From: Macrostomum lignano | Lineage: Eukaryota | NCBI GenBank assembly: GCA_002269645.1 | Contig: NIVC01004288.1 | Span: 1-51,615, forward strand | DNA length: 51,615 nucleotides | Reading direction: 5' to 3' | Part shown: positions 3,003 through 51,615 of the stretch, in pieces | Layout of the letters: each line of letters opens with the position of its first letter | How positions within the stretch are numbered: position 1 is the first letter of the stretch | Notes under the pieces: generated by a model | What the model was told of the DNA's origin: nothing | Seen by the model: only the letters and a program-made list of their open reading frames with translations | Databases searched by the model: none | Translations under genes and position numbers: made by a program

Positions 3003-3119
3003 ACACTGTGATTAGTAATCCGCACTGCCTCTTCCAAATCAGGCCTGGTGAATCTGCCTTCTGTTTCCTGCATTCGCTTTCTTTCCTAGAAAAGAATTTC
3101 CAATTGCCCATTTTAACTC

Positions 3120-10349: not shown

Positions 10350-13300
10350 CTACAAGCCGCTAGCCTTCTGCCTGATAAAGGACTTGAAATCGTCAAGATT
10401 GTGCGCAATCCAGTTAATGTTTGCCTTCACCGACTCGAGGCTCTGGAAGGCGCTGCGCCAACCAGACTGCAGGTCTCTGTTCGCGAAGAAGCTGGACAGC
10501 TGGCGGAGTTTGAGAAGGGGTGGGGATTTGCTTGCACCACTTTGGTGACGATTCAATTGTGCCACATTTCTCTGATAAAGTGACTTCTCACTCACTTAAA
10601 AGCCTGACACAAATCTAGCGAAAACATAACATAAGTCTGACACAAAGTTGACACCTGACACAAACCTGACACCTGACACAAAATTGACACCTGACACAAA
10701 CCCCACTGCACACCTGACACAAACCTGACACCTGACACAAAATTGACACCTGACACAAACCTGAAACCTGACATTTGAAACAAACCCGAAACCTGACACA
10801 AAATCCGACATCTGAAACAAAATCCGACATCTGACACAAAATCCGACATCTGACACAAAATCTGACATCTGACACAAAATCCGACATCTGACACAAAATC
10901 CGACATCTGACACAAAATCCGACATCTGACACAAAATCCGACATCCGACACAAAAATCTGACATCTGACACAAAAATCTGACATCTGACACAAAATCCGA
11001 CATCTGACACAAAATCCGACATCTGACACAAAATCCGACATCTGACACAAAATCCGACATCTGACACAAAATCCGACATCTGACACAAAATCCGACATCT
11101 GACACAAAATCCGACATCTGACACAAAATCCGACATCTGACACGAAATCCGACACCTGACACAAAGCCCGACACCAGATGCAGACCTGACACATGACCCC
11201 CAGGTAAACTCACCCGCTGATAATCGTATTCGGTGTGGAATTCAGCCGGGAATTTGGTGACCTCAGTGAGAGTAAACGCCATGTCATATCGCTCCATCAT
11301 GATGTCCCAGTTGCGCTCGAAGTAGCTCCACACCAGCTCCCTGAGGCCGCTCCGCCTGCAAAGCTTGGCCGCAATGCTGAACGCTTCTTGCGAATTCAAG
11401 TTGAGCAGACTTTGAATTAGCCTAAAATTAGGGGATATTGGGGGCGCTGACGTCTCACACTTCTGCTGACTGACTGACGTCTCACACCACTGCTGACTAA
11501 AATCTCATACCACTCCTAACTGACTGACATCTCACACCACTGCTGACTGACTGACATCTCATACCGCTGCTGAGTGACTGACATCTCATACCACTGCTGA
11601 CTGACTGACATCTCATACCACCGCTGACTGACTGACATCTCACACCACTGCTGACTGAAATCTCACACCACTGCTGACTGACTGACATCTCACACCACTG
11701 TTGACTGAAATCTCATACCACTGCTGATTGACGTCTCATACCACTGCTGACTGACTGACATCTCATACCACCGCTGACTGACTGACATCTCACACCACTG
11801 CTGACTGACTGACATCTCACACCACTGCTGACTGAAATCTCACACCACTGCTGACTGACTGACATCTCACACCACTGCTGATTGACATCTCACACCACTG
11901 CTGACTGACTGACGTCTCACACCACTTCTGACTGACGTCTCATACCACTGCTGACTGACTGACATCTCATACCACCGCTGACTGACTGACATCTCATACC
12001 ACCGCTGACTGACTGACATCTCACACCACTGCTGACTGACATCTCATACCACTGCTGACTGACTGACATCTCATACCACCGCTGACTGATTGACATCTCA
12101 CACCACTGCTGACTGACTGACGTATCACACCACTTCTGACTGACGTCTCATACCACTGCTGATTGACATCTCACACCACTGCTGACTGACTGACGTATCA
12201 CACCACTGCTGACTGACTGACGTATCACACCACTGCTGACTGACTGACGTATCACATTACTTCTGACTGACGTCTCATACCACTGCTGACTGACTGACGT
12301 CTCACCCATATATAGATGAGTCATCGCATCTCTCTCCCACCCCAGTGGTCTGAGTCATCGCATCTCTCTCCCACCCCAGTGGTCTGAGTCATCGCATCTC
12401 TCTCCCACCCCAGTGGTCTGAGTCATCGCATCTCTCTCCCACCCCAGTGGTCTGAGTCATCGCATCTCTCTCCCACCCCAGTGGTATGAGTCATCGCATC
12501 TCTCTCCCACCCCATTGGTCTGAGTCATCGCATCTCTCTCCCACCCCATTGGTCTGAGTCATCGCATCTCTCTCCCACCCCATTGGTCTGAGTCATCGCA
12601 TCTCTCTCCCACCCCATTGGTCTGAGTCATCGCATCTCTCTCCCACCCCAGTGGTCTGAGTCATCGCATCTCTCTCCCACCCCATTGGTCTGAGTCATCG
12701 CATCTCTCTCCCACCCCATTGGTCTGAGTCATCGCATCTCTCTCCCACCCCATTGGTCTGAGTCATCGCATCTCTCTCCCACCCCATTGGTCTGAGTCAT
12801 CGCATCTCTCTCCCACCCCATTGGTCTGAGTCATCGCATCTCTCTCCCACCCCAGTGGTCTGAGTCATCGCATGTTTCAATTCACTGGGAAAAGGCGCAC
12901 CGGTAGTTAGTGTCCACATCGGAGGACATGGCCAAGGCTGAGCACACGTGCTTGGCCTCAGAATAGGATTCAATCTCGTTCAGCCGGTTCTTGAAGAACT
13001 GCCAGTCGCTGGTGTTGCCTTTGTAGACGCCAATCTCATAGATGAGTTCGATTTCGTCTGGTGGCAGGCTGTGGGTGAGGATCCAGGTGGGTGAGGATAT
13101 ATATGGGTGAGGATCCAGGTGGGTGAGGATACAGGTGGGTGAGGATCCAGGTGGGTGAAGATATATATGGGTGAGGATCCAGGTGGGTGAGGATACAGGT
13201 GGGTGAGGATACAGGTGGGTGAGGATACAGGTGGGTGAGGATACAGGTGGGTGAGGATACAGGTGGGTGAGGATCCAGGTGGGTGAGGATATATATGGGT

Positions 13301-32891: not shown

Positions 32892-35800
32892 TCAGTTGGT
32901 GTCGGAGTGACAGGACTGGCTCCGGCTGGTGCAGGGCGCGCGCAGCTGGCCGCTGGTAAAGGCGTGCAGGAAGGCCTCCAGCTGGTGCAGAGTGAGCGAG
33001 TTGTGCAGCGTCTCCAGCGGATAAATCTCTGGAACCCGCGGCGCGGCGGCCAGCTGCTTCGTCTGCTCGACTCCACCAGCTGTGATGGTCGCCGCTCCGT
33101 CGCTGGCTGTCGGCGAAGACGACAACGATGGAGCCGTGGCGAAGGAAGCGACGGACTTGAAGGCGGACTGCTCGGCCGGCTGAACGTCCGGGTCGGAGCC
33201 GCGGATGAGGCTGGTGGAGATGAGATTCCTGGAATAGGCGCTTGCTGAGGGGCCTGGAATACATAGAGAGGAGATTCGCTCGTTAGATGGTTTGCAACGG
33301 TAACTTATAGCGCTTATTGAATAAGGCATGTCGATTCCGCTGAACCATGAGCACTGACACAGGAGTGCACTTTGACATTGTGAAGTCTCGATGATACTTC
33401 GTACCTACAGATTGTTCTCACCTGGCCTCAACAGAGACTTGGGGATGATGTTGCCGAAAATACGTCGAAGGTCTTCCGACCCGTGATAGGTTCCGTAGTT
33501 GAAGGACAACTCAGGAGTCAACTCGCTCTCGCTGATGGTTCGCTGCTGTTGCTGCTGCTGTTGCTGCTGCTGTTGTTGTTGCTGTTGCTGTTGCTGCTGA
33601 TGTTGCTGCTGGTGTTGTTGCTGAAGCTGCTGTTGCTGCTGCTTCTGCTCCTGTTGCGGTGTCCAATCAGTTTTGACAGCATCGTCTAACGCAGGCGCCT
33701 TGCGCAGCTGCCGGTGAGACCAGGTGTTCTGCCGGTGACGCATGGCTGTGCCTGGACAGGCGATGTTCGGGGTGAATTAACTGAAGCACAGCTAGCTTCG
33801 TATTTTAGTATTAAAATATAGCTTCAGAATTTAATTTAAACGTCTTTTATCAGCCGAGTTTCGGGAGTTCAGTGGACTTAGAACCCATGCCTAGAGAAGA
33901 GTGGATCCCGATCAACAATCAATTATATTTTAGCTAGTTAAAATGTCAAAACGATCGAAAGTTACTAGCCGTGAATTTTTCTCATTTTTAAAAATTCTAA
34001 AGATGAAGATGAGCTTCGGCAACTGGATTTTGAACCACAGTTGCCAACTAGCAGCTGAAATTCCGACCCTAAAACCCTGGCGATTTTTATATTATAAATG
34101 TAACTGGGATTCGAACTTTGGCCCTCGGAGCTCTCACCGCCAGCGGTCGCATCAAATTGCGCAGGCAACGGCGGCGGCTGCGGCTGCGTCGGCAACTCCG
34201 CCGTTCGCGACATCTCAAATCGTCCCACTCGAACCACGGGCGGATCCGATGGAGAAGCCGGCGGGGGCGGCTGAGGCTGAGGCGGAATCTGCACGGTCTG
34301 CACAGCTTCTTCTTCCAGAACGGGCAAGGATCGATAGACGTTGCCTGGGGACAGGTGCAGCTCCACGTGGTAGCGGCCTCGGGAGCCGGTGGTCTGGGTC
34401 GGGTCCTCGTAGATCATGAACACGATCTGGGTGAGGTAGCCCAGCTCCGGCACCGAGTCGCAGAACTCCAGCGCCCGGGCCCACTGCTCGTCTGAGGCCG
34501 CGTTGGCCAGGCCGCCGAAGCGCAGAGCAGCTAGCAGGGTGTGCAGGTGCGACTCCGAGGTGAAGTAGAGCCTGGTGCGCACGAACCGCTCAGGTGAGGC
34601 CACATTTAATGAGTAACTGCGATTTAACGGTTTAGGATGGGGCAGCTGAGGTTTGCTGTCACGTTTGTGAAGCATCTTGAGCCATCGTGTTTACCGAGAT
34701 CTTCAAGCATCTTAAATCTGTTTACCCAGACCCGGAAACATCCTAGGGATATCAAGTGAAACCTTAAAGTGTCTTGAAGTTATGAAGCCATAATTCCACA
34801 TCCGGAATGTCTTGACTCACTCAGTGTTCAGTCTGGTACTGCCGCACTCGTCAAAGTCCAGGTTGCTGGTGTACTGTGTGTCGGCCAGTATTTTCCTTAG
34901 CAACGGGCTGCACACCTGCTCCGCAATGGCCAGCTTCTCCTCTCTTGTGATGCCATATTCGCTGGGCACGACAATGTCGGCCATATTTTTCGCCAGCAGG
35001 TACAGCTCCTTGGCTTGTGAAAGGTCGGCGAAATGTTCCTGATTGTGCAGCAGGTCGTACTTGATGTTGTCGTAGATATCTGGCACTTTGGAGAAGGCGA
35101 ATCTGGACTCCCCGTTGACCGCGTCGCCGGTTGAACAAACGTTCGATTGGTGAAAGTCCTTGGCCAGCTTGCGCCATCGTCCCAAGGCCAGGTCTATGCT
35201 TTCTCCGTGGTAGAGCAGCTTCTGGTGCTGCTGCTGCTGCTGCTCTGCCAGCTGCGCCAACTTGCCGCAGATCGCCTCCATGCAGGCGCTCATTCTCTTG
35301 CAGGCTCTGGCCGGATTGCCGATGCGGTACATCGCCCTCAACACCGAGGTGGGCCCGGTTGGCGCGATGCGCTGCAGGTCCGCCTCGTTCCATTCGCGGT
35401 CGCAGCTCAGACAGGCCTGGATCCGCGCCTTCACCACGGCCATGAACCGGCGCCACTCGCTCGCCCCGGAGTCCAGCAGGCCGTCAGTGTTCGCGGATTT
35501 CACCATCTGCACCAGGATAGGCGTCAGCGGGCCCTCCAGATCGAGGAAGCCCTTGGCAAAGGCGGCAGCCGTTGTCTGGACTCGGCCCTCGTCGCTGGCG
35601 TAGATTTTCAGATCGTGCCGGTAGGTTGAGTGCAGGCGCAGCAGGCCCAGCCCGTCCTGCTGCGAGTAGCTCTCGCCACCCGGGTAGATCACCCTGGAGT
35701 GTTTTGGGACTTTGGTTTGATTGTGGGATTTTTGCTAAAAATCATGATTTCAACTTTATTCAGAGTGGGTGATCGTCATCGACAACTGAATTACTCGTAG

Positions 35801-38800: not shown

Positions 38801-41800
38801 AGAGGAGAGGGGAGAGGAGAGAGGAGAGGAGATAGGAGAGGAGATAGGAGAGGAGAGGAGAGAGGAGAGAGGAGAGGAGATAGGAGAGGGGAGGAGAGAG
38901 GAGAGGAGATAGGAGAGGGGAGTAGAGGAGAGAGGTGAGGAGAGAGGAGAGGGGAGGAGAGGAGAGGAGAGAGGAGAGGGGTAAAGAGGAGAGGAGAGGA
39001 GAGGAGAGAGGAGAGGAGAGAGGAGAGGGGAGGAGAGGAGAGGAGAGAGGAGAGGGGTAAAGAGGAGAGGAGAGAGGAGAGGAGAGAGGAGAGGAGAGAG
39101 GAGAGGAGAGTGGAGAGGAGAGTGGAGAGGAGAGAGGAGAGGAGAGAGGAGAGAGAGGAGAGGAGAGAGGAGAGGAGAGAGGAGAGGAGAGAGGAGAGGA
39201 GAGAGGAGAGGAGAGAGGAGAGGAGAGGAGAGGAGAGAGAGAGGAGAGAGAGAGGAGAGGAGAGGAGAGAGGAGAGGAGAGAGGAGAGGAGAGAGGAGAG
39301 GAGAGAGGAGAGGAGATAGGAGAGGAGAGAGGAGAGGAGAGGAGAGAGGAGAGGAGATAGGAGAGGAGAGGAGAGAGGAGAGGAGAGAGGAGAGGAGAGA
39401 GGAGAGGAGAGAGGAGAGGAGAGGAGAGAGGAGAGGAGAGGAGAGAGAGAGAGGAGAGAGGAGAGGAGAGAGGAGAGGAGAGGAGAGAGGAGAGGAGATA
39501 GGAGAGGAGAGGAGAGAGGAGAGGAGAGGAGAGAGGAGAGGAGAGAGGAGAGGAGAGAGGAGAGGAGAGAGGAGAGGAGAGAGGAGAGGAGAGAGGAGAG
39601 GAGAGAGGAGAGGAGAGAGGAGAGGAGAGGAGAGGAGAGGAGAGGGAGAGAGGAGAGGAGAGGAGGAGAGGAGAGAGGAGAGGAGAGAGGAGAGGAGAGA
39701 GGAGAGGAGAGGAGAGGAGAGAGGAGAGAGAGAGAGGAGAGGAGAGGAGAGAGGAGAGGAGAGGAGGAGGAGAGGAGAGAGGAGAGAGAGAGGAGAGAGG
39801 AGGAGAGGAGAGAGGAGAGGAGAGAGGAGAGGAGAGAGGAGAGGAGAGAGGAGAGGAGAGAGGAGAGGAGAGGAGAGAGGAGAGGAGAGGAGAGAGGAGA
39901 GGAGAGGAGAGAGGAGAGGGGTAAAGAGGAGAGGAGAGAGGAGAGGAGAGAGGAGAGGAGAGGGAGAGGAGAGAGGAGAGAGAGAGGAGAGGAGAGAGGA
40001 GAGAGAGAGAGGAGAGGAGAGAGGAGAGGAGAGAGGAGAGGAGAGGAGAGAGGAGGAGGTAAAGAGGAGAGGAGAGAGGAGAGGAGAGAGGAGAGGAGAG
40101 AGGAGAGGAGAGGAGAGAGGAGAGAAGAGAAGGGGGGAGCAGATGAGAGAGAGGAGGAGAGGAGACGAGAGGAGGAGAAAAGAGAGGAGAGAGGAGATTA
40201 GAGAGAAAAGACCTGAGAAAAGACACAAACCTTGAGCGTGGCGGATTGCTATTGTTAATTTTTCAAAGGACCCGAGGGCCGAATAGAGACCCTGATTTAG
40301 ACTAGTGAGCCATCGGACAAGTGAGTTTTTCAGTATGTACAATCCAAACTGGCTACTTAGACTCAGTAGTGAGTGAAAAGTATGCTGAGACATACAATAT
40401 ATGGTAGAATTAGTCAAGTGAGAAATACCTTCTTGGCGATAATTTTCTCCCTGGCGGTGAGTATGATTGGGCAGCGCATCTCCTTGCCCTCCGAGTCGCG
40501 CTCCACTTTGCCATCCAGGGCTGGCGACTTACGGGCCTCGGCGTGAGCGTAGTCCTTGCCGATGGCGTACACCTGGGCAAGGCGGTTAGAGCGTTAAACT
40601 TGGAAGTTTGTTTGCATTATCAGAGCCAAGCAGATTAGCCCTCGATGACAGTGCAAGCCAGTTTGTATTCACCAGCCCGACTGGCATGCGATTGAAAGTA
40701 TCAAGTTTACAATAATTTTCCAACTGGAAATTGTAGCATCACAGCGGGGGGGGGGCAGCGACCCGACTGCATTTGCATAGCAGCAAACCGGCAACAGCCA
40801 CTTCCACTGCTGGTTCAAAGTCAAAAGTACGCAAACTCGATTGTGGAAAATATTTTTGGGGTTTTTTTCATAGCGCCTGCTGTGCGAAACAGACTGGAGA
40901 GATGCTGGTTGCCCGGGCATATGAACACCTGTTTGTCTGAACTTCACTTTGTATGCGGGAATTCCGCGCTAAATTTGGATTGCAATTTATGCGTCCGTAC
41001 TTGAAGAAATACTGATTCTGCCTGATCTGAGGGTCACGTGGGGTTGCTAGCTTATTCTGAGGTTGTAATAAAGTTCTAAATAGTCTCATATGAGAGTCCT
41101 TGGGGTTGGTAGCCTCATCTGATGGTCATATGAGGTTCTAGTTAGCTTCACCTGTGGGTCATGTGCAGCGTTAAACCAAAGGGTCATGTGAGGTTCTAAT
41201 TAGCCTCACCTGAGGGTCATATTGTGAGGTTCTAATCAGCCTGAGGGTCATGTGAGGTTCTAATCAGCCTCACCTGAGGGTCATGTGAGGCTCTAATCAA
41301 CAAACGCCAGCCCAGCTAACCTTGATGTCCGTGCCGTCAGTGAGCATGAAGTCTTCGTACAAGAAGCTGCCCTGGCGCCGGACCCGACTCTCGCCACTCA
41401 GGTAGACGCTGCTGCAGTTGCCAATCTTGCGAAACAGCTTCACGCAGCCGCCGCCAGCTGAGCTGGGAAAATAAATTCTAATGTTGTGATCCTCGGCATC
41501 AATTGGCTTCTCAACAAACGGCTTGTGAAACACCTGGCCGAGCACGCTGATCTGATCATCTGATTCTGTCAGAGCGGACTCGCTGCTACGGTCAACTTCG
41601 TCTACCGCCGTATGACAGTCTTTGCTGTTACTGTCATTACTGCTACTACTATTATTAGTATCATTATTATTATTATTATTACTATTCTGGCTGGTGTTTC
41701 TGGCACAGCGCTGCAGCACAGCGTAGCGCACCACAGGGATGTCTCGCTCGCGCAGGCGCTCGTACACCAGCCGCCGGTCCATCAGGAGCCGCTGGGCCGC

Positions 41801-45983: not shown

Positions 45984-47030
45984 TGAAGGGTGGTCATTTC
46001 AATGCATAGCTGGCTTGAGAGTGGTTCAAGAATTTAGCAATCTCTCATATAGGTCAAGAATGCCTATGTTTACGATTGATACTTTCTTTAAATGGATCAT
46101 TAAGGATATAGTGAATACGAGCTAAGTTCTACTACAAGTACTGTAGTGAGAAGCTATGATCATAAAATATTCGGACTTCTCTGTAAATCAGAAATGCTGA
46201 AATCAATGCCATTAAAATCAAGCAAAAGTGCAGCTTTCCCATTAAACGCTGCTGTCAATCGCGTATTATTTATTCCGTTAGAGTGAGGACTTCTAACCAC
46301 ACGAGAGACGGATTACCCATCTGTCAATCTTAGTTGCAAATTTCGGGTTTTGCATTAGGGAATACGATTAAGAATTTCGGACATCTGTCTACGATACAGC
46401 ATGCTCATTTATGCTGATTTTCCTGCTTTCCTTATGTAAAATTATGCACCTCAAACCGCTAAATTCATAGAAACAGCTTCCTAACTGACAAGTTGCTGAA
46501 TTCACTAAAATGACTGAGGAAATTTTGAGTGTCATCAAGGGGGAACTGAAAAAGTCTCTTAATGTGCTCATGCTCAGGCGAAGAAATCTGATTCCACTAT
46601 TCGGGCTTCTGATGACGTTCTAATGAATTTTTTCAGGAGAGTGTTGACAGACTTTTACTTGTTCGAGAGACACGACTGCTATTTTTGAGCAGTCCACTCC
46701 GCTCGACATTCAAGTAGTTTCTCAAGGCTGCACGAATTTCACTTTGGCTCAGATTTCTTCATTTGAAAACTGCTTGAGTCGATTGGAAGGCTGATTTCGG
46801 CTGAAAGTGACGGACTGAAGTACTTCTGGTGTGACATGACTGTCTTATGGAATGGGGGTCTGAATTAAGGTGTCTGTTGTGAGGCGTGTGCCTGCATGCA
46901 ATGGCGGGTACAGCACGCCTGTGTAGCATGAGACAGATTAGGCCTACGGGCTAAGGTCTGCGATCCTACACACCTGCACCCCCTCTATTCTGGTGCAGGA
47001 ATGGCAGGAGAACTCTCTCCAAGCTGACTC

Positions 47031-47099
47031 GCAAGCCGACCCAGGGGTTCACGCCCCGCATGTGTTCAAGGCAGCTCTAGGGCTGCTGGACTGACTGGG
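47031..47099 (+). ncRNA. Candidate HDV/CPEB3-like self-cleaving ribozyme in the retrotransposon 5' UTR
   Basis: P2 CCCAG(47040-44)/CUGGG(47095-99); P3 GGG/CCC; L3 UUCACGC; P1' GCAUGU + GU; P4 47066-47090; J4/2 CUGA. See findings for weaknesses. Confidence 0.5.
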
Positions 47100-47496
47100 C
47101 TCCGGCGGCGGCAACCCATCCGTGGCCTTTTGGCCAAGTTGGGTACGGGCTCCGCCCGGAAGTGCACCTGTGCGTATCAGGTACCTCTGGCCACGGCTCT
47201 GAGGAACAGGTACCACCCTCTGACCTTAACAGGGTATGCGGCCAGTCCGCAGGCTCCGGAGGCAGTCCTCCTGCTTCCCTCAAGGGCCCAGTGTAGTACC
47301 GTGCTGATGGTCCTTTGGTTCGGCCTCTGGTTTTTCCAAGCCGGGCTCTTAGCCGGGGAGTTTCTCGGTTGCTAGCGGTCGGGCCGGTACGGGCTTAAGC
47401 CACCCCCCGGTCGCTACCTCTTGGCCTGGTTGTTGGGTTTGGGGTTACGGCCCAGCGGCTTCTCACCTTTAGTCCCCACTCGCCTTTCAGCGACTC

Positions 47497-48793
47497 ATGG
47501 AGTATTCATTTACCTCCGACACGTCCGAGGCTGCTGGAGCACCAACCGAGGTTGGCACCGCGGCCCAGCCGGACATTCGCAACACCGGAACCCCCGGTGC
47601 CTCTCAATCTGCCGCTGCCGCCGCTCAGGATAATACCGGAGTGGCTGGACAAGACAGCGGACCTCAGATTTCAAAAAAGAAGGCCCGTAGCATTGCTCGC
47701 TACAAAGCCTTTCTCCAGCGCAAAGCGGAGGAACGGAGGAATGCGAAAGCCGCCCCTCCGGCCACCTCCGAGGAGGATGCCGGTAACTCTGCGAACCCCG
47801 CGGAGGAGCCGACATCCGACAAGGGGGTGGACCCCGCGCGCCGGTCTGATGCGTCAGGTGCCGCCGAAGCTCCTGGTGCGGCTGGCCCCTCCCGTGACCG
47901 GACCTCTGCCCGTGTGGAAGCTCCCACGGCCGTGGAGGGATCCAAAGCGGGGGGCGCTGGCCAAACCACAAAGCCGAAGCGAACCTACGCGGCTATGGCC
48001 AAAAGGCAGCCGGCCCTGGTTATCCAAGGCCAGGAGACGCCTCTTACGGCCGAACAGCTCGACCTTATCTGGCGCAGGTTGGACTCCCACCTGGTCAAGA
48101 TGGCCTTGAGCGGCACTACTATTCGAGTCCAAAAGACGAAAGTCGAGGACCAAGCCCTCTATATCCAGCCCACCGACAGCCAGTCAGGACAGCAGCTCCT
48201 CGAGCTGCTGAAAACCTTCGACTGGAGTACGGAGCTGGAGAACCTGTTCATCTACAGGGAGGACGAGCGACCCCGGACACACCGGCACCGTGCCTGGATC
48301 CCGGCTCGCAGCTGCATCACCAAGGCCGACGAGCTGCGTCACCTGCTAGTGGCTTCCAACCCGGAGCTACCGGCCAACGGTGTCGTAGTCCAAGCCGGGC
48401 GGAGACGGTTTCACGGCTATTCTTGGACTGTCGGATAGCTGGATGCTCCGCTACCCGGACATGTCCATCATCTCTGTCGGGCTGTTGCAGATTCAGCTCT
48501 TTAGAACAGGCGGACGTGGAAAGGGCCGGAAACCCGCCCGGAACACTATCCGCTCTGGTCTGACTCAGCGCGCGAAGCAGCTGCTGGACACCGCCAAGGC
48601 CCCCAACCCAGCCACCCCCAGCCCAGTGTCACCACTGCGGCCCCCCCCGGAAAACCGGGCCGAGAGCGAGAATGCCGCCCAGGTAGCGACCTCGCCCTCG
48701 ACCATGGAATCCATCCGGGAGGAGCCCATGGAGCTGGAGCCGGGAGCTATCGGCGAGGCAGAAGAGGCAGCTCTCCTGCACAACTCGCCTTGA
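47497..48793 (+). CDS. Retrotransposon ORF1 (about 430 aa, one frameshift near 48398), resembles DUF4780-type LOA ORF1
   Basis: ATG 47497; low-complexity N-terminus, then TYAAMAK...RAWIP...LLVASNPEL. Continues in the +1 frame (GDGFTAILGLSDSWMLRY...LLHNSP*) to TGA 48793. Confidence 0.7.
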
Positions 48794-51615
48794 GCCGGCA
48801 GGAAGCTGCGCGGACCACTTGTGGAATTCCCGGAGTGGACATCCTGCAGCTTAACCTGCACCACTGCATCGCGGCCTCGACCAACCTGATGCGGGTGGCA
48901 AACTTTGCGAAACCGGGCATCATCCTACTCCAGGAGCCCTGGACAAAGAAAGGTAAGATTCCGAATATTCCTGCTGGTTTTGACTGTTTTCAAGACCCCC
49001 AAAACCCCAGAGCAGCCATTTTCGTATCTACCCACCTCAAAGCTTGGCACAGACCGGACCTCTCTGACAGAGACCTCTGTGTCATTCAGTCCAACCACAT
49101 TATCACCAACCGCACAGTCATCATCGCCTCGATCTATATCCCTGGCGATGGCCCCGCGGTTCCACCCAACCTCACCTCCCTCGTGGACTACTGCTCTAAC
49201 CGTAGGTTCGAGCTGCTGGTGGCGGGCGACATCAACGCTCACCACACCCACTGGGGCAGTAATACTGGTACTTCCAATAGCAGAGGCGAGGAACTCCTTG
49301 CTTACATCTGCACCACCAACACTGAGTTTTGCAACATTGGTGGAACCCCCACCTTTGACAACGGGCGATGGACGGAGGCCCTCGACGTTACCCTCGTCTC
49401 CATGGCTTGGCTCCTTTAGTCAAGGTCTGGGAGGTGTGGGACGAAGAGGAGTCTCTGTCTGACCATCGCTTCGTTCGTTTTCGTTTGCAATCCTCTTGCC
49501 CCAAGCCTAACATTCTGTGGAAAAGGAACGTCCGGAACACTGATTGGACGGCTTTCACGGAAACCCTGAAATGCCAGACAGATCAGCTGACTACCGTCGC
49601 TGCAACCACCTGTCAGGAAGTGGATGACCTTGCAGACTTGCTCAGCAAGACCGTCCTGACAGCCCATAAGGCTTCCTGTCCTCTTAAAGCCTACAAAGGC
49701 AAAAAATCCGCCCCCTGGTGGCACCCGGCGCTCGGATCCCTCCGGCGCAAGGCAAAGTGCCTCCAATGGAAAGCTCGCAAGAGCAAGGACCCAGCTGACC
49801 TGGCCGCCTATCAAGAAGCGATCCGCGACTTTAAGCGTGAAAGCAGGAAAGCCAAGTCCGACAAATGGCGCCAATACTGCGCGGAGTTAGAAGGCACCCG
49901 CCCTACTTCGCGCGTAGTTAAGGCTCTCACCCTCGACAAAATGTCAAAGCTCTCAGTCATTAAAAGACCGGACGGCCGGCTCGCTGAGAACCCTGGGGAA
50001 TCGCTGGACATTATGCTCACCAGCTCTTTCCCACGTGCCGCACCGCAGCTAGGCCCACCGGACCACTCTCCGGGCGGACAGATCCTGGCTTCGACCATCA
50101 TTACTAGAGAGAGGACGGCTCGCGCCGCAAAATCCTTCTCTTCTTTCAAGTCCCGGGTCCTGACAACATTTATCCTGCCTTCCTTCATGAGGCAGTTAAA
50201 AATGACAGGTTTCTCGGCCTCCTCTGCAACCTCTTCAAGGCCAGCATTACCCTCGGTACGTGCCAAAAGCCTGGCAAGAGGCTACGGTAGTCTTCATACC
50301 CAAGCCAGGAAAGGGAGACTATCACTCCGCCAAAGCTTACCGCCCTATCAGTCTGACGTCCTTCTTCCTCAAACTGATGGAACGGCTGGTGCTCTGGCGC
50401 CTTCTCCTTGTTAAGCTGAGGAACTCCCCGCTCTCCCCTAATCAGCACGCCTTTCGTCCTGGACGTTCCATCGAAAGTGCGCTGCACGCCATTGTCGACA
50501 AGCTGGAGCGCGCCGTGCTTGGCAGTGGATACGCGCTGTCGCTTTTCCTCGACATTGATGGTGCTTTTAACAATGTGCTCTTTGAAGCCTTTAAGCGAGC
50601 CCTGGAATCCCGGGGCACGCACGAGCACCTCACCCGCTGGATCATGTACATGGTCTCCCATCGTACTGCCACCTCGCACCTCCTGGGACACTCACGCTCC
50701 GTGGAAGTCCAGAAAGGCGGACCGCAAGGTGGAGTCCTCAGCCCGATCCTCTGGAACTTAGTCATGGACGAGCTGCTTTGCAGCCCGCATCCGGACCCTG
50801 TTCAGAAGGTCGACTATGCGGACGATGTTACCGCCACTGTGGCTGGACCATCGCCCACGGTCCTCAGGGACCTCCTTCAAGCCTTCATCCACCGTGCCGA
50901 GCGCTGGGCACATAGCTGCGGTCTCAGGTTCTCTGAGTCTAAAACCGTGGCTATCATGTTCACCAGCCGCCGAAACTGGAGGATCGAACCGCTCTCCCTC
51001 TACGGAAAACCTGTTGCCATGGAGAAACAATTTAGATGTCTGGGCGTCACCCTCGACCACAGGTTGAGCTGGACCCCGCACGTCCAAACCAAAGCCCGCA
51101 AAGCTCTCGCGACTCTCGCGCAGATCCGCAGAGCTTTCGGTGCTACCTGGGGCCTCACCCCCCGCCGCCTCTGGTGGATTTACACTGCCATTGTTAGACC
51201 GGCCATCTCCTTCGCCGGCTTCATTTGGAACAGTGCCCTAGAGGTGAAAGGGGTTCTTGAGGTTTTAAATAGGGTGCAAGGCCGCGCTTGTCGAGCTATC
51301 ATGAGCGCGGCTCCCTCAACGCCCTTCGCTGGCATGAACTCCTTCTTGGACATTCCCCCCCTCGACCTCTTTGTTAGAGGGGAGGCAATGAAAACCACCC
51401 GTCGTCTGCTTGACGCGGGTGTCCAAATCCAGACGCAGTTTGCCTTCAGAAAGCGGAACCTCCGGCCGCATGGCGACCTCAGCCTGCGAGACCTGGAAGC
51501 AGCGGAGGCCTGCTGACCTCTCGGACGGAATCCCGTCACGCTCTGCCCCCGCTCAAATTCAAAACCAGCATTCCACCACGCCATGAAAGCGAGAGACAAC
51601 TGGAAACCCATGAAA
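48790..51615 (+). pseudogene. Retrotransposon ORF2 (APE endonuclease + reverse transcriptase), broken by four -1 frameshifts
   Basis: APE motifs ILQLNLHH, LLQEPW, IASIYIP, AGDINAHH..WGS, SDHRFV; KS(P)GPDNI; RT core. Frameshifts at about 49401, 50152, 50257 and 51503; no in-frame stops in the reconstructed path. Confidence 0.85.

What the first reader, a model, noticed from the sequence alone, without database searches (positions are those of the whole stretch)
47031..47099. CPEB3/HDV-like self-cleaving ribozyme fold in the 5' UTR of the LOA-like retrotransposon
Seen: the elements occur in exact HDV nested-double-pseudoknot order. P2 CCCAG (47040-44); P3 GGG (47045-47); 7-nt L3 UUCACGC (47048-54); P3' CCC (47055-57); P1' GCAUGU (47058-63); GU (47064-65); P4 UC..GGCAGC/GCUGCU.GA (47066-90); then C-U-G-A (47091-94, putative catalytic C47091) directly before P2' CUGGG (47095-99). 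Known: the CPEB3 ribozyme has L3 UUCACGU, a U-G reverse wobble, a single C-G P1.1 pair beside a U-U mismatch, and CNRA before P2'; all are reproduced here. HDV-like ribozymes are established at the 5' ends of several non-LTR clades (R2, RTE, L1Tc/ingi), where they process the transcript. Inference: the P1 5' strand is either GCAAGC at 47031 (G1-U wobble, one A-A mismatch, 3-nt J1/2, compact 69-nt ribozyme) or the perfect GCAUGC at 46894 with a structured J1/2 of about 135 nt. Weaknesses: P1 is 6 bp rather than the usual 7, and this copy may be mutated.
Basis: partly seen in the sequence, partly recalled or inferred. Interest (0 to 1): 0.85.

Follow-up and report, generated by a model that had tools for sequence, protein, structure and literature searches.

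The report
HDV-like ribozyme heading a flatworm LINE
The start of a decayed jumping gene (a non-LTR retrotransposon) in this Macrostomum lignano sequence folds like the hepatitis-delta-type self-cutting RNAs that several such elements use to trim their own transcripts, so it is a new example of a known trick, and it is about 206 bases long, not the 69 first proposed.

Summary
Within the window alone the motif is only weakly above chance: the core descriptor is expected 1.3 times per window, and the full descriptor about 0.1 times. No Rfam HDV or CPEB3 model matches.

One diverged homologue decides the case. It is a full-length element on a Logan contig (L001), and its 5'UTR is about 55% identical to the window's. 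All 16 pairs of P1, P2, P3 and P1.1 fall in the same columns of an unguided alignment, and 31 of 32 cells pair. Three pairs show compensatory double changes. One U.U becomes C-G, and one G.U becomes G-C. P2 gains a coordinated extra A-U pair. The neutral expectation for this is about 8e-5.

L3 keeps U1 and G6 in both sequences, and a C follows P4 in both. P4 is a hairpin of unrelated sequence in each.

Covariation picks the distal P1 strand (GCAUGC, 46894-46899). It rejects the compact GCAAGC at 47031, whose GC lies in the helix that closes a structured 140-nt J1/2 domain. L001 begins exactly at the predicted cleavage-site G.

Verdict: a large HDV-like ribozyme spanning 46894-47099, a new member of a known kind. 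Catalysis is untested, and this copy of the element is degenerate.

The parts
46893..46894 (+). Predicted scissile bond between U46893 (-1) and G46894 (+1). It is also the inferred 5' end of the element.
   Evidence: G46894 is the first nucleotide of the covarying P1. The homologous contig L001 starts at exactly this aligned base. GC content rises from about 42% upstream to about 64% downstream.
46894..46899 (+). P1 5' strand, GCAUGC.
   Evidence: It pairs without interruption with 47058-63, with G.U at the cleavage site. L001 has GCCUGC/GCAGGC: an A-U to C-G double change and G.U to G-C. Plain MFE folding of both sequences predicts this helix.
46900..47039 (+). J1/2 peripheral domain of 140 nt (163 nt in L001). 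It has conserved linkers AAUG (46900-03) and AAGCCGA (47033-39), and a closing helix 46904-46909 with 47027-47032.
   Evidence: RNAalifold gives 31 pairs, 12 with compensatory changes. All 62 cells are paired, against 34-48% when partners are slid. The closing helix also appears in the window's own MFE fold. The internal helices are less certain, because the MFE and alifold structures differ around 46973-47009.
47040..47044 (+). P2 5' strand, CCCAG.
   Evidence: It pairs with 47095-99. L001 has CUCAG(A)/(U)CUGAG: a C-G to U-A double change plus one extra A-U pair inserted on both strands.
47045..47047 (+). P3 5' strand, GGG.
   Evidence: It pairs with CCC 47055-57 and is invariant in L001.
47048..47054 (+). 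L3, UUCACGC. U47048 and G47053 are the candidate reverse-wobble pair. C47050 and U47049 are the P1.1 partners.
   Evidence: L001 has UCUCCGU. U1, C5 and G6 are kept while 4 of 7 positions differ. The roles of the L3 U and G are taken from PMC3774820 and PMC4836649.
47055..47057 (+). P3 3' strand, CCC.
47058..47063 (+). P1 3' strand, GCAUGU.
47064..47065 (+). J1/4 nucleotides GU, forming P1.1: G47064-C47050 plus U47065.U47049.
   Evidence: L001 has A195-U181 and G196-C180. That is one double compensatory change and one mismatch turned into a pair.
47066..47090 (+). P4 hairpin: U66-A90, C67-G89, an AA/G internal loop, GGCAGC/GCUGCU, and loop UCUAGG.
   Evidence: Its fold energy is -9.8 kcal/mol. 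L001 has a longer hairpin of unrelated sequence at the same place (-24.5 kcal/mol) that also has an AA bulge near its base.
47091..47094 (+). J4/2, CUGA. C47091 is the candidate catalytic cytosine, equivalent to HDV C75 and CPEB3 C57.
   Evidence: A C directly after P4 is kept in L001 (C228, J4/2 CUGC). The role of this C is taken from PMC4836649 and PMC13635239.
47095..47099 (+). P2 3' strand, CUGGG. This is the 3' end of the ribozyme.
47100..47496 (+). The rest of the 5'UTR. It is 62% identical to L001 and has conserved blocks, for example CAGGTACCTCT at 47178-88.
47497..48745 (+). ORF1, with a frameshift near 48390.
   Evidence: It is 91-97% identical to ORF1 segments embedded in Macrostomum lignano UniRef gene models.
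48844..51606 (+). ORF2 fragments (AP endonuclease, then reverse transcriptase) in frames 1, 3, 2 and 1. It is cut by the window end at about residue 928 of 1232.

Best explanation
Window 46894-47099 encodes a large HDV-like self-cleaving ribozyme at the very 5' end of a degenerate EN-RT(-RNase H) non-LTR retrotransposon of Macrostomum lignano.

The RNA folds into the nested double pseudoknot:
- P1, 46894-99 with 47058-63
- P2, 47040-44 with 47095-99
- P3, 47045-47 with 47055-57
- P1.1, 47050 (and 47049) with 47064 (and 47065)
- P4, 47066-90

A structured 140-nt domain is inserted in J1/2.

The remaining steps are inferred from what is known of the family. C47091 in J4/2, together with a Mg2+ ion held by the L3 U47048.G47053 pair, would cut the chain 5' of G46894. 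That releases the element RNA from whatever upstream transcript it rides on and leaves it with a 5'-OH. The whole ribozyme lies downstream of the cut, so a full-length cDNA carries it to the next insertion site. The J1/2 domain probably holds P1 and P2 together, the 'pinch' effect shown for large mosquito ribozymes.

Shown here: the fold, its covariation, and the 5' end of the related contig. Inferred: catalysis and biological role.
For: - All strands are present in canonical order. The strict core descriptor finds this site as the only hit on the + strand.
- L001 is a full-length relative: ORF2 67-77% identical, ORF1 about 46-49%, 5'UTR about 55%. It matches a descriptor relaxed only at J4/2, at the homologous place, with P1 at contig base 1.
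- In a MAFFT alignment made without any structure, all 16 core pairs share columns.
- 31 of 32 cells are paired and 3 pairs changed on both sides. Slid controls give 22-48% paired and no double changes.
- Neutral simulations give P = 8e-5 that all 16 pairs survive. This holds with the UTR-wide substitution spectrum and when conditioned on the 9 substitutions seen at paired sites.
- Unpaired core positions are only 14/34 identical, against 23/32 for paired positions.
- The catalytic-site letters are kept in both: G+1, L3 U1 and G6, and a C right after P4.
- P4 is a stable hairpin of unrelated sequence in each.
- MFE folding predicts P1, P3 and P4 in both sequences independently.
- The J1/2 domain covaries.
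- Position -1 is U, the most favourable -1 nucleotide for the genomic HDV ribozyme (PMC1874588).
- Context fits. 5'-terminal HDV-like ribozymes are established in R2, R4, Dong, baggins, RTE and L1Tc (PMC3774820, PMC6765202), and large J1/2 domains activate such ribozymes (PMC4908430).
Against: - Only two independent sequences exist, so every covariation count rests on one comparison.
- P1 is 6 bp in both sequences, one short of HDV and CPEB3.
- L001 has G-C rather than G.U at the cleavage site, and C rather than A at the fourth J4/2 position.
- No Rfam HDV-type model matches the window at E<=10 or L001 at E<=1.
- Within the window the motif is only about a 1-in-10 chance event. The relaxed descriptor hits 12% of L001-sized shuffles.
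- The window copy is a dead element with at least four frameshifts, so its ribozyme may also be impaired.
- L001 starting at G+1 could be an assembly accident.
- More distant relatives (33-37% ORF2 identity) show no such motif in the upstream DNA available.
Confidence: 0.78

Rival explanations
1. A conserved, structured 5'UTR domain that keeps an HDV-like shape but does not cut. It could be a protein-binding or translation-initiation platform, or a ribozyme that has died in this decayed copy.
For: The element in the window is degenerate. P1 has 6 bp, and P1.1 has only one Watson-Crick pair in the window. The R2 5' ribozyme region is also bound by R2 protein and has been proposed to act like an IRES (PMC6765202). 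Weak P1.1 has been linked to slow CPEB3 cleavage (PMC13635239). The covariation shown here proves a fold, not chemistry.
Against: The letters that matter only for catalysis are kept although the surrounding unpaired positions are about 60% diverged. These are G+1, L3 U1 and G6, and the C after P4. The related contig starts at the predicted cut site. CPEB3 has the same one G-C plus U.U P1.1 and still cleaves (PMC4836649).
Confidence: 0.12
2. A chance constellation of short complementary strings in a GC-rich UTR, with the L001 match arising from shared ancestry of the sequence alone.
For: The core descriptor is expected 1.33 times per window and the full one 0.10 times. The relaxed descriptor hits 12% of L001-sized shuffles. 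The shuffle control has no power with two sequences (56/500).
Against: Nine substitutions at paired sites all preserve or create pairing (P = 8e-5). Slid controls collapse to 22-48% paired with no double changes. A one-pair insertion is matched on both strands of P2.
Confidence: 0.05
3. One reading: P1 formed by GCAAGC 47031-36, a 3-nt J1/2, and cleavage 5' of G47031.
For: GCAAGCCG is conserved in both sequences. In the window it can form 5 of 6 pairs with GCAUGU.
Against: It needs an A.A mismatch in the window and two central mismatches in L001 (GCAAGC against GCAGGC). The U47061-to-G change is compensated at 46896, not at 47033. The no-mismatch descriptor with a short J1/2 finds nothing. G47031 and C47032 pair with 46904-05 in the J1/2 closing helix in the alifold structure and in the window's MFE fold. 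P1 mismatches are uncommon and are associated with inactive ribozymes (PMC3774820). L001 extends 160 nt upstream of this site with homology throughout.
Confidence: 0.03

Closest known systems
HDV-like ribozymes at the 5' ends of non-LTR retrotransposons (Drosophila baggins, RTE, R2, R4, Dong, Trypanosoma L1Tc)
   Same: The fold is the same nested double pseudoknot. It sits at the extreme 5' end of an EN/RT element. The cleavage site appears to coincide with the first nucleotide of the element, as reported for R4, Dong, baggins and L1Tc (PMC3774820, PMC6765202, PMC3185411). The inferred job is also the same: freeing the element RNA from a co-transcript.
   Different: The host is a free-living flatworm (Macrostomum). 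A full-text search of the held library for Macrostomum with ribozyme gave nothing relevant. P1 is 6 bp. There is no detectable sequence similarity to any Rfam HDV-type model. Whether the element belongs to the same clade as baggins (LOA) was not tested.
Large HDV-like ribozymes with a structured J1/2 ('P1.2') peripheral domain, for example the Anopheles drz-Agam-2 family and the R2 ribozymes
   Same: A long insertion between P1 and P2 is closed by a helix next to the core (46904-09 with 47027-32). [quoted passage not shown] R2 ribozymes also carry long J1/2 loops (PMC3774820).
   Different: Here the insertion is 140-163 nt and appears to be a multi-helix domain with conserved single-stranded linkers (AAUG, AAGCCG). 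Its effect on activity is unknown.
Mammalian CPEB3 ribozyme
   Same: L3 TTCACGC matches TTCACGT at 6 of 7 positions (mouse primer sequence in PMC10919898). P1.1 has one G-C pair beside a U.U, and J4/2 is 4 nt starting with the catalytic C (PMC4836649).
   Different: These likenesses belong to the window copy only. The homologue L001 has L3 UCUCCGU and a two-pair P1.1. CPEB3 is a compact 68-nt intronic ribozyme, a length I give from my own knowledge. This one is about 206 nt and heads a transposon. The Rfam CPEB3 model does not match.
Caenorhabditis briggsae HDV-family ribozyme (crystal structure)
   Same: Its P1.1 is built from a U:A pair plus a non-standard pyrimidine pair (PMC13635239). This shows that the P1.1 variants seen here (U-A plus C-G in L001, C-G plus U.U in the window) are within what active family members tolerate.
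   Different: There is no sequence relation, and it was not compared directly here.

Membership tests
HDV-like self-cleaving ribozymes | Nested double pseudoknot with strands in the order P1, (J1/2), P2, P3, L3, P3', P1', P1.1, P4, J4/2, P2' | tested here: met
   The window strings are in this order. Descriptor hits occur in the window and, independently, at the homologous place in L001.
HDV-like self-cleaving ribozymes | The helices are real, meaning they are maintained by compensatory change | tested here: met
   31 of 32 cells are paired and 3 pairs show double changes, against 22-48% and none in slid controls. Neutral P = 8e-5. Only two sequences are available.
HDV-like self-cleaving ribozymes | An uninterrupted P1 whose first nucleotide (G+1) is the cleavage site | tested here: met
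   The window has GCAUGC/GCAUGU and L001 has GCCUGC/GCAGGC. Both have no mismatch and G at +1.
HDV-like self-cleaving ribozymes | P1 length of 7 bp with a G.U wobble at its base (typical of HDV and CPEB3 rather than strictly defining; from my own knowledge) | tested here: not met
   P1 is 6 bp in both, because A46900 faces C47057, which is used in P3. The window has G.U but L001 has G-C. PMC4035085 notes that the original search rules for the family were too restrictive.
HDV-like self-cleaving ribozymes | A catalytic cytosine as the first nucleotide of J4/2, directly after P4 | tested here: met
   C47091 (CUGA) in the window and C228 (CUGC) in L001. The fourth J4/2 position is A in the window but C in L001.
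HDV-like self-cleaving ribozymes | L3 of about 7 nt carrying the U and G of the reverse wobble that seats the catalytic Mg2+ | tested here: met
   L3 is UUCACGC in the window and UCUCCGU in L001. U1 and G6 are kept while 4 of 7 positions differ. The importance of the L3 G is described in PMC3774820.
HDV-like self-cleaving ribozymes | A 3-bp P3 and a 1-2 bp P1.1 between L3 and the nucleotides after P1' | tested here: met
   P3 is GGG/CCC in both. P1.1 is C-G plus U.U in the window and U-A plus C-G in L001.
HDV-like self-cleaving ribozymes | Mg2+-dependent self-scission giving a 5'-OH and a 2',3'-cyclic phosphate | not testable with these tools
   This needs an in vitro transcription and cleavage assay.
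HDV-like self-cleaving ribozymes | A match to a curated Rfam model (HDV, CPEB3, drz-Agam and others). This is not defining, because the models are narrow and cannot encode pseudoknots. | tested here: not met
   There was no match at gathering score on the window, none at E<=10 on 46600-47500, and none at E<=1 on L001.
Retrotransposon 5'-terminal processing ribozymes (R2 / RTE / baggins / L1Tc type) | [quoted passage not shown] | tested here: met
   The ribozyme is at 46894-47099 and ORF1 starts at 47497. EN and RT lie downstream on the same strand.
Retrotransposon 5'-terminal processing ribozymes (R2 / RTE / baggins / L1Tc type) | Full-length copies begin at or near the cleavage site | tested here: inconclusive
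   L001 starts exactly at G+1, and the window's base composition shifts there. This is one contig only, and no other genomic copies could be fetched.
CPEB3 ribozyme (mammalian) | A conserved compact sequence in the CPEB3 intron that matches Rfam's CPEB3 model | tested here: not met
   There is no Rfam match. It sits in a flatworm transposon, and its CPEB3-like letters are not conserved in L001.
LOA clade of non-LTR retrotransposons | RT phylogeny placing the element with LOA/baggins | not tested
   Only the domain order was shown: AP endonuclease, RT and RNase H, with a separate ORF1. No reference set of clade sequences was available.

The most novel reading that the evidence does not exclude
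The 140-163-nt J1/2 insertion may be more than a passive clamp. It could be a conserved multi-helix regulatory module that gates self-cleavage, or that recruits the ribosome to the uncapped 5'-OH RNA. Its covarying helices and invariant single-stranded linkers (AAUG, AAGCCG, GGGCUAAGGUCU) would bind the element's own ORF1/ORF2 protein or a host factor. That would make this a natural allosteric HDV-like ribozyme that works with a 6-bp P1.
Probability: 0.2. Interest if true: 0.6.

Novelty: new member of a known kind. Interest (0 to 1): 0.38.

Why it matters
If it cleaves, HDV-like 5'-processing ribozymes extend to a non-R2 LINE family of a free-living flatworm that is a laboratory model for regeneration. 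It would also be a natural ribozyme with a 6-bp P1 and a large, covarying J1/2 domain, useful for studying how peripheral domains tune this fold.

The case also shows that Rfam covariance models miss such ribozymes completely. Descriptor searches combined with comparison of homologues are needed to annotate them. Beyond that it is an expected feature of this class of element, not a surprise.

Tried and rejected
1. Rfam on the whole window at gathering score found nothing. At E<=10 on 46600-47500 it gave only three chance-level hits, none an HDV-type model. At E<=1 on L001 and six related loci it gave no HDV-type hit.
2. No other copy of the element or its UTR lies in the window.
3. The metagenome scan with the conserved 17-mer GGGCTAAGGTCTSCGAT gave 55 loci.
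4. Protein-guided scans of genome contigs and viral contigs with the L001 ORF2 found nothing.
5. The closest other relative (P0004, 56% ORF2 identity) has no DNA available, and its contig lacks the 5'UTR.
6. More distant relatives L002, L003 and L059-L062 (33-37% ORF2 identity) show no UTR homology. The relaxed descriptor found nothing in them. A still looser one gave only an unconvincing hit in L060.
7. M. lignano UniRef gene models identify the species but carry no usable UTR information.
8. An alternative P2' (UUGGGU, 47139-44) with a 69-nt P4 is rejected because L001 does not keep it.
9. Weaker P1 5' strands at 46884 and 46886 need three G.U pairs.
10. One relaxed descriptor hit lies on the minus strand near 33134. 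It has J4/2 CAAC and no homologue to test it against. It fits my length-scaled expectation of about 2 chance hits per window, extrapolated and not simulated separately.
11. Ruminski 2011 and Webb 2009 could not be read. Their content is cited only through papers that describe them.

Full report
**What is in the sequence**

- GCAAGC at 47031-36, and the alternative P1 strand GCATGC at 46894-99
- CCCAG at 47040-44, GGG at 47045-47, TTCACGC at 47048-54 and CCC at 47055-57
- GCATGT at 47058-63 and GT at 47064-65
- a hairpin at 47066-90
- CTGA at 47091-94 and CTGGG at 47095-99

The nucleotide before 46894 is U.

Downstream on the same strand lie ORF1 (47497 onward) and fragments of an ORF2 with AP-endonuclease and reverse-transcriptase domains. 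tblastn with an intact relative shows frameshifts near 48390, 49401, 50195 and 50287. The element runs off the window at about ORF2 residue 928 of 1232, so this is a decayed copy.

ORF1 is 91-97% identical to segments embedded in UniRef gene models of Macrostomum lignano. The window is therefore from that flatworm or a very close relative.

**Is it more than chance?**

Rfam gives nothing. There was no match at gathering score on the whole window and no HDV, CPEB3 or drz model at E<=10 on 46600-47500.

I wrote a descriptor for the core: P2 of 5 bp, P3 of 3 bp, L3 of 7-8 nt with U at position 1 and G at position 6, CNRA, and P2'. It finds this site as the only + strand hit. However, 200 composition-preserving shuffles give 1.33 such cores per window.

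Adding P1.1, a P4 hairpin and a mismatch-free P1 within 200 nt gives 0.10 per window, with 9% of shuffles hitting. The compact form (J1/2 of 10 nt or less, no mismatch) is not matched at all.

On the window alone the finding is therefore suggestive, not significant.

**The homologue**

A protein search with ORF1 returned a single relative (P0001, 49% identity). It is encoded on a 6492-bp Logan contig (L001, run ERR14788467) that carries a full-length element with ORF1 and an intact EN-RT-RNase H ORF2.

ORF2 is 67-77% identical to the window's fragments. The 5'UTRs align at about 55-62% identity. L001 matches a descriptor relaxed only at the fourth J4/2 position, at the homologous place, with P1 at contig base 1.

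**Covariation**

In the MAFFT alignment A1, made with no structural information, all 16 pairs of P1, P2, P3 and P1.1 fall in the same columns. Counting on that alignment gives 31 of 32 cells paired.

| Helix | Window | L001 | Change |
|---|---|---|---|
| P1 | GCAUGC/GCAUGU | GCCUGC/GCAGGC | A-U to C-G; G.U to G-C |
| P2 | CCCAG/CUGGG | CUCAG(A)/(U)CUGAG | C-G to U-A; an extra A-U pair from matched one-base insertions on both strands |
| P3 | GGG/CCC | GGG/CCC | invariant |
| P1.1 | C-G plus U.U | U-A plus C-G | one double change; one mismatch becomes a pair |

Sliding the 3' partners by 1-3 columns drops pairing to 22-48% and removes every double change. The tool's own shuffle control has no power with two rows (56/500).

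I therefore simulated neutral change. With the substitution spectrum of the whole UTR alignment, all 16 pairs end up as standard pairs in 8e-5 of a million trials. Conditioning on exactly the nine substitutions seen at paired sites gives the same 8e-5.

Paired positions are 23/32 identical, and unpaired core positions only 14/34. Even so, the letters needed for chemistry are kept in both sequences:
- G at +1
- U1 and G6 of L3 (UUCACGC in the window, UCUCCGU in L001)
- a C immediately after P4 (C47091 and C228)

P4 is a stable hairpin in both (-9.8 and -24.5 kcal/mol) with unrelated sequence. That is the usual behaviour of this peripheral helix.

Plain MFE folding cannot see pseudoknots. It still predicts P1, P3 and P4 in each sequence on its own.

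**Which P1?**

Covariation decides for the distal one.
- The U47061-to-G change in P1' is compensated at 46896 (A to C).
- GCAAGC at 47031 is unchanged in L001. It would have two central mismatches there and one in the window.
- G47031 and C47032 instead pair with 46904-05. This is a six-pair helix (46904-09 with 47027-32) that closes the J1/2 insertion. It appears in the window's MFE fold and in the RNAalifold consensus, with two double changes.

P1 mismatches are uncommon and are associated with inactive ribozymes (PMC3774820).

The ribozyme is therefore about 206 nt long (46894-47099), not 69.

The J1/2 insertion is 140 nt here and 163 nt in L001. It shows 31 consensus pairs, 12 with compensatory change. 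All cells are paired, against 34-48% in slid controls.

That structure was derived from these same two sequences, so the count is generous. The inner helices also differ between the MFE and consensus predictions.

**The 5' end**

L001 starts at the base aligned with G46894. A de Bruijn-graph contig of a multi-copy element tends to break where the copies' flanks diverge. On that reasoning, which is my inference, the start suggests that full-length copies begin at the predicted cleavage product's first nucleotide. This has been reported for R4, Dong, baggins and L1Tc (PMC3774820).

In the window, GC content jumps from 42% to 64% across this point. This is one contig, so I call it supportive, not proof.

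**Mechanism**

Shown: the fold and its conservation.

Inferred from the family (PMC4836649, PMC13635239, PMC4908430, PMC6765202):
- C47091 acts as the general acid, and a Mg2+ ion is positioned by the L3 U.G pair.
- The backbone is cut 5' of G46894 during transcription.
- The element RNA is released from an upstream co-transcript with a 5'-OH.
- The ribozyme lies entirely downstream of the cut, so it is copied into every full-length insertion.
- The closing helix of J1/2 probably pinches P1 and P2 together. [quoted passage not shown]

**Deviations and doubts**

- P1 is 6 bp in both sequences.
- L001 has G-C instead of G.U at the cleavage site, and C instead of A at the end of J4/2.
- P1.1 in the window has one Watson-Crick pair plus U.U. 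CPEB3 has the same arrangement (PMC4836649), and the C. briggsae ribozyme has U:A plus C:U (PMC13635239).
L3 matches the mouse TTCACGT at 6 of 7 positions (PMC10919898). It is absent from L001, so it is not a family trait.
- The window copy is dead as a transposon and may be a weakened ribozyme.
- The clade label 'LOA-like' was not tested.

**What could not be obtained**

No further homologues of this UTR were reachable.
- The one metagenome scan returned only chance matches.
- Scans of the prokaryotic and viral collections found nothing.
- The next closest relative has no DNA on hand.
- Elements at 33-37% ORF2 identity share no UTR homology and show no convincing motif.

**Comparison and novelty**

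HDV-like ribozymes at the 5' ends of non-LTR retrotransposons are well established: R2, RTE, baggins, R4, Dong and L1Tc (PMC3774820, PMC6765202, PMC3185411). Long structured J1/2 domains are also established (PMC4908430). A full-text search of the held library for Macrostomum together with ribozyme found nothing relevant.

This is a new member of a known kind. It has a short P1 and a large covarying peripheral domain as points of modest specialist interest.

I put 0.78 on the lineage carrying a genuine HDV-like self-cleaving ribozyme at this position, and about even odds that this particular decayed copy still cleaves efficiently.

Noticed in passing
window 1555-44400: A large share of the window upstream of the element consists of minisatellite arrays, roughly 30-40% by eye from the repeat table. 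Unit lengths run from 8 to 34 nt, for example 16-nt units from 12943, 20-nt units at 3007, 7664 and 16452, 34-nt units at 12215 and 25194, and 9/12-nt units from 43493. Many have extreme strand skew: GC skew reaches 1.0 at 39001-40000.
   Followed up: no
L002 283-369 and L003 111-197: A more distant LINE (ORF2 37% identical to L001's; NCBI assembly GCA_003704835.1 and Logan SRR7614709) carries a stretch upstream of ORF2 that matches the Alu domain of Rfam's metazoan SRP RNA model. The score is 42.9 bits, E 7e-8, below the gathering score of 70. It may be an SRP-Alu-like module in a LINE 5' region.
   Followed up: no
window 47100-47496: The 5'UTR downstream of the ribozyme keeps several blocks identical to L001 despite about 40% divergence overall. 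Examples are CAGGTACCTCT at 47178-88 and TAAGCCACCCCC at about 47396-47407. Their function is unknown. A role as a translation-start or protein-binding element is possible.
   Followed up: no
window 46900-03, 46949-46966 and 47033-39: Within J1/2 the predicted single-stranded linkers AAUG and AAGCCG(A/C), and the block GGGCUAAGGUCU(G/C)CGAU, are invariant between the two elements while neighbouring helices covary. This suggests tertiary contacts or a binding site.
   Followed up: partly
window 47135-47144: An alternative P2' (CAAG followed by UUGGGU) could pair with ACCCAG 47039-44 and enclose a 69-nt P4. It is not conserved in L001, so it was judged fortuitous. It could still compete during folding in this copy.
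   Followed up: yes
window 48390, 49401, 50195 and 50287: Frameshifts in ORF1 and ORF2 show this copy is a dead element. M. lignano UniRef gene models (P0002, P0005, P0006, P0008, P0011, P0017, P0034) are chimeras that fuse pieces of this LINE family to host genes.
   Followed up: partly
L001 5954-6492, minus strand: The contig's 3' 540 nt, beyond ORF2, carries two antisense ORF calls of 142 and 37 aa. The 142-aa ORF has no Pfam match. It is unclear whether this stretch is a long 3'UTR of the element or flanking DNA. That bears on how to read the contig's 5' end.
   Followed up: partly
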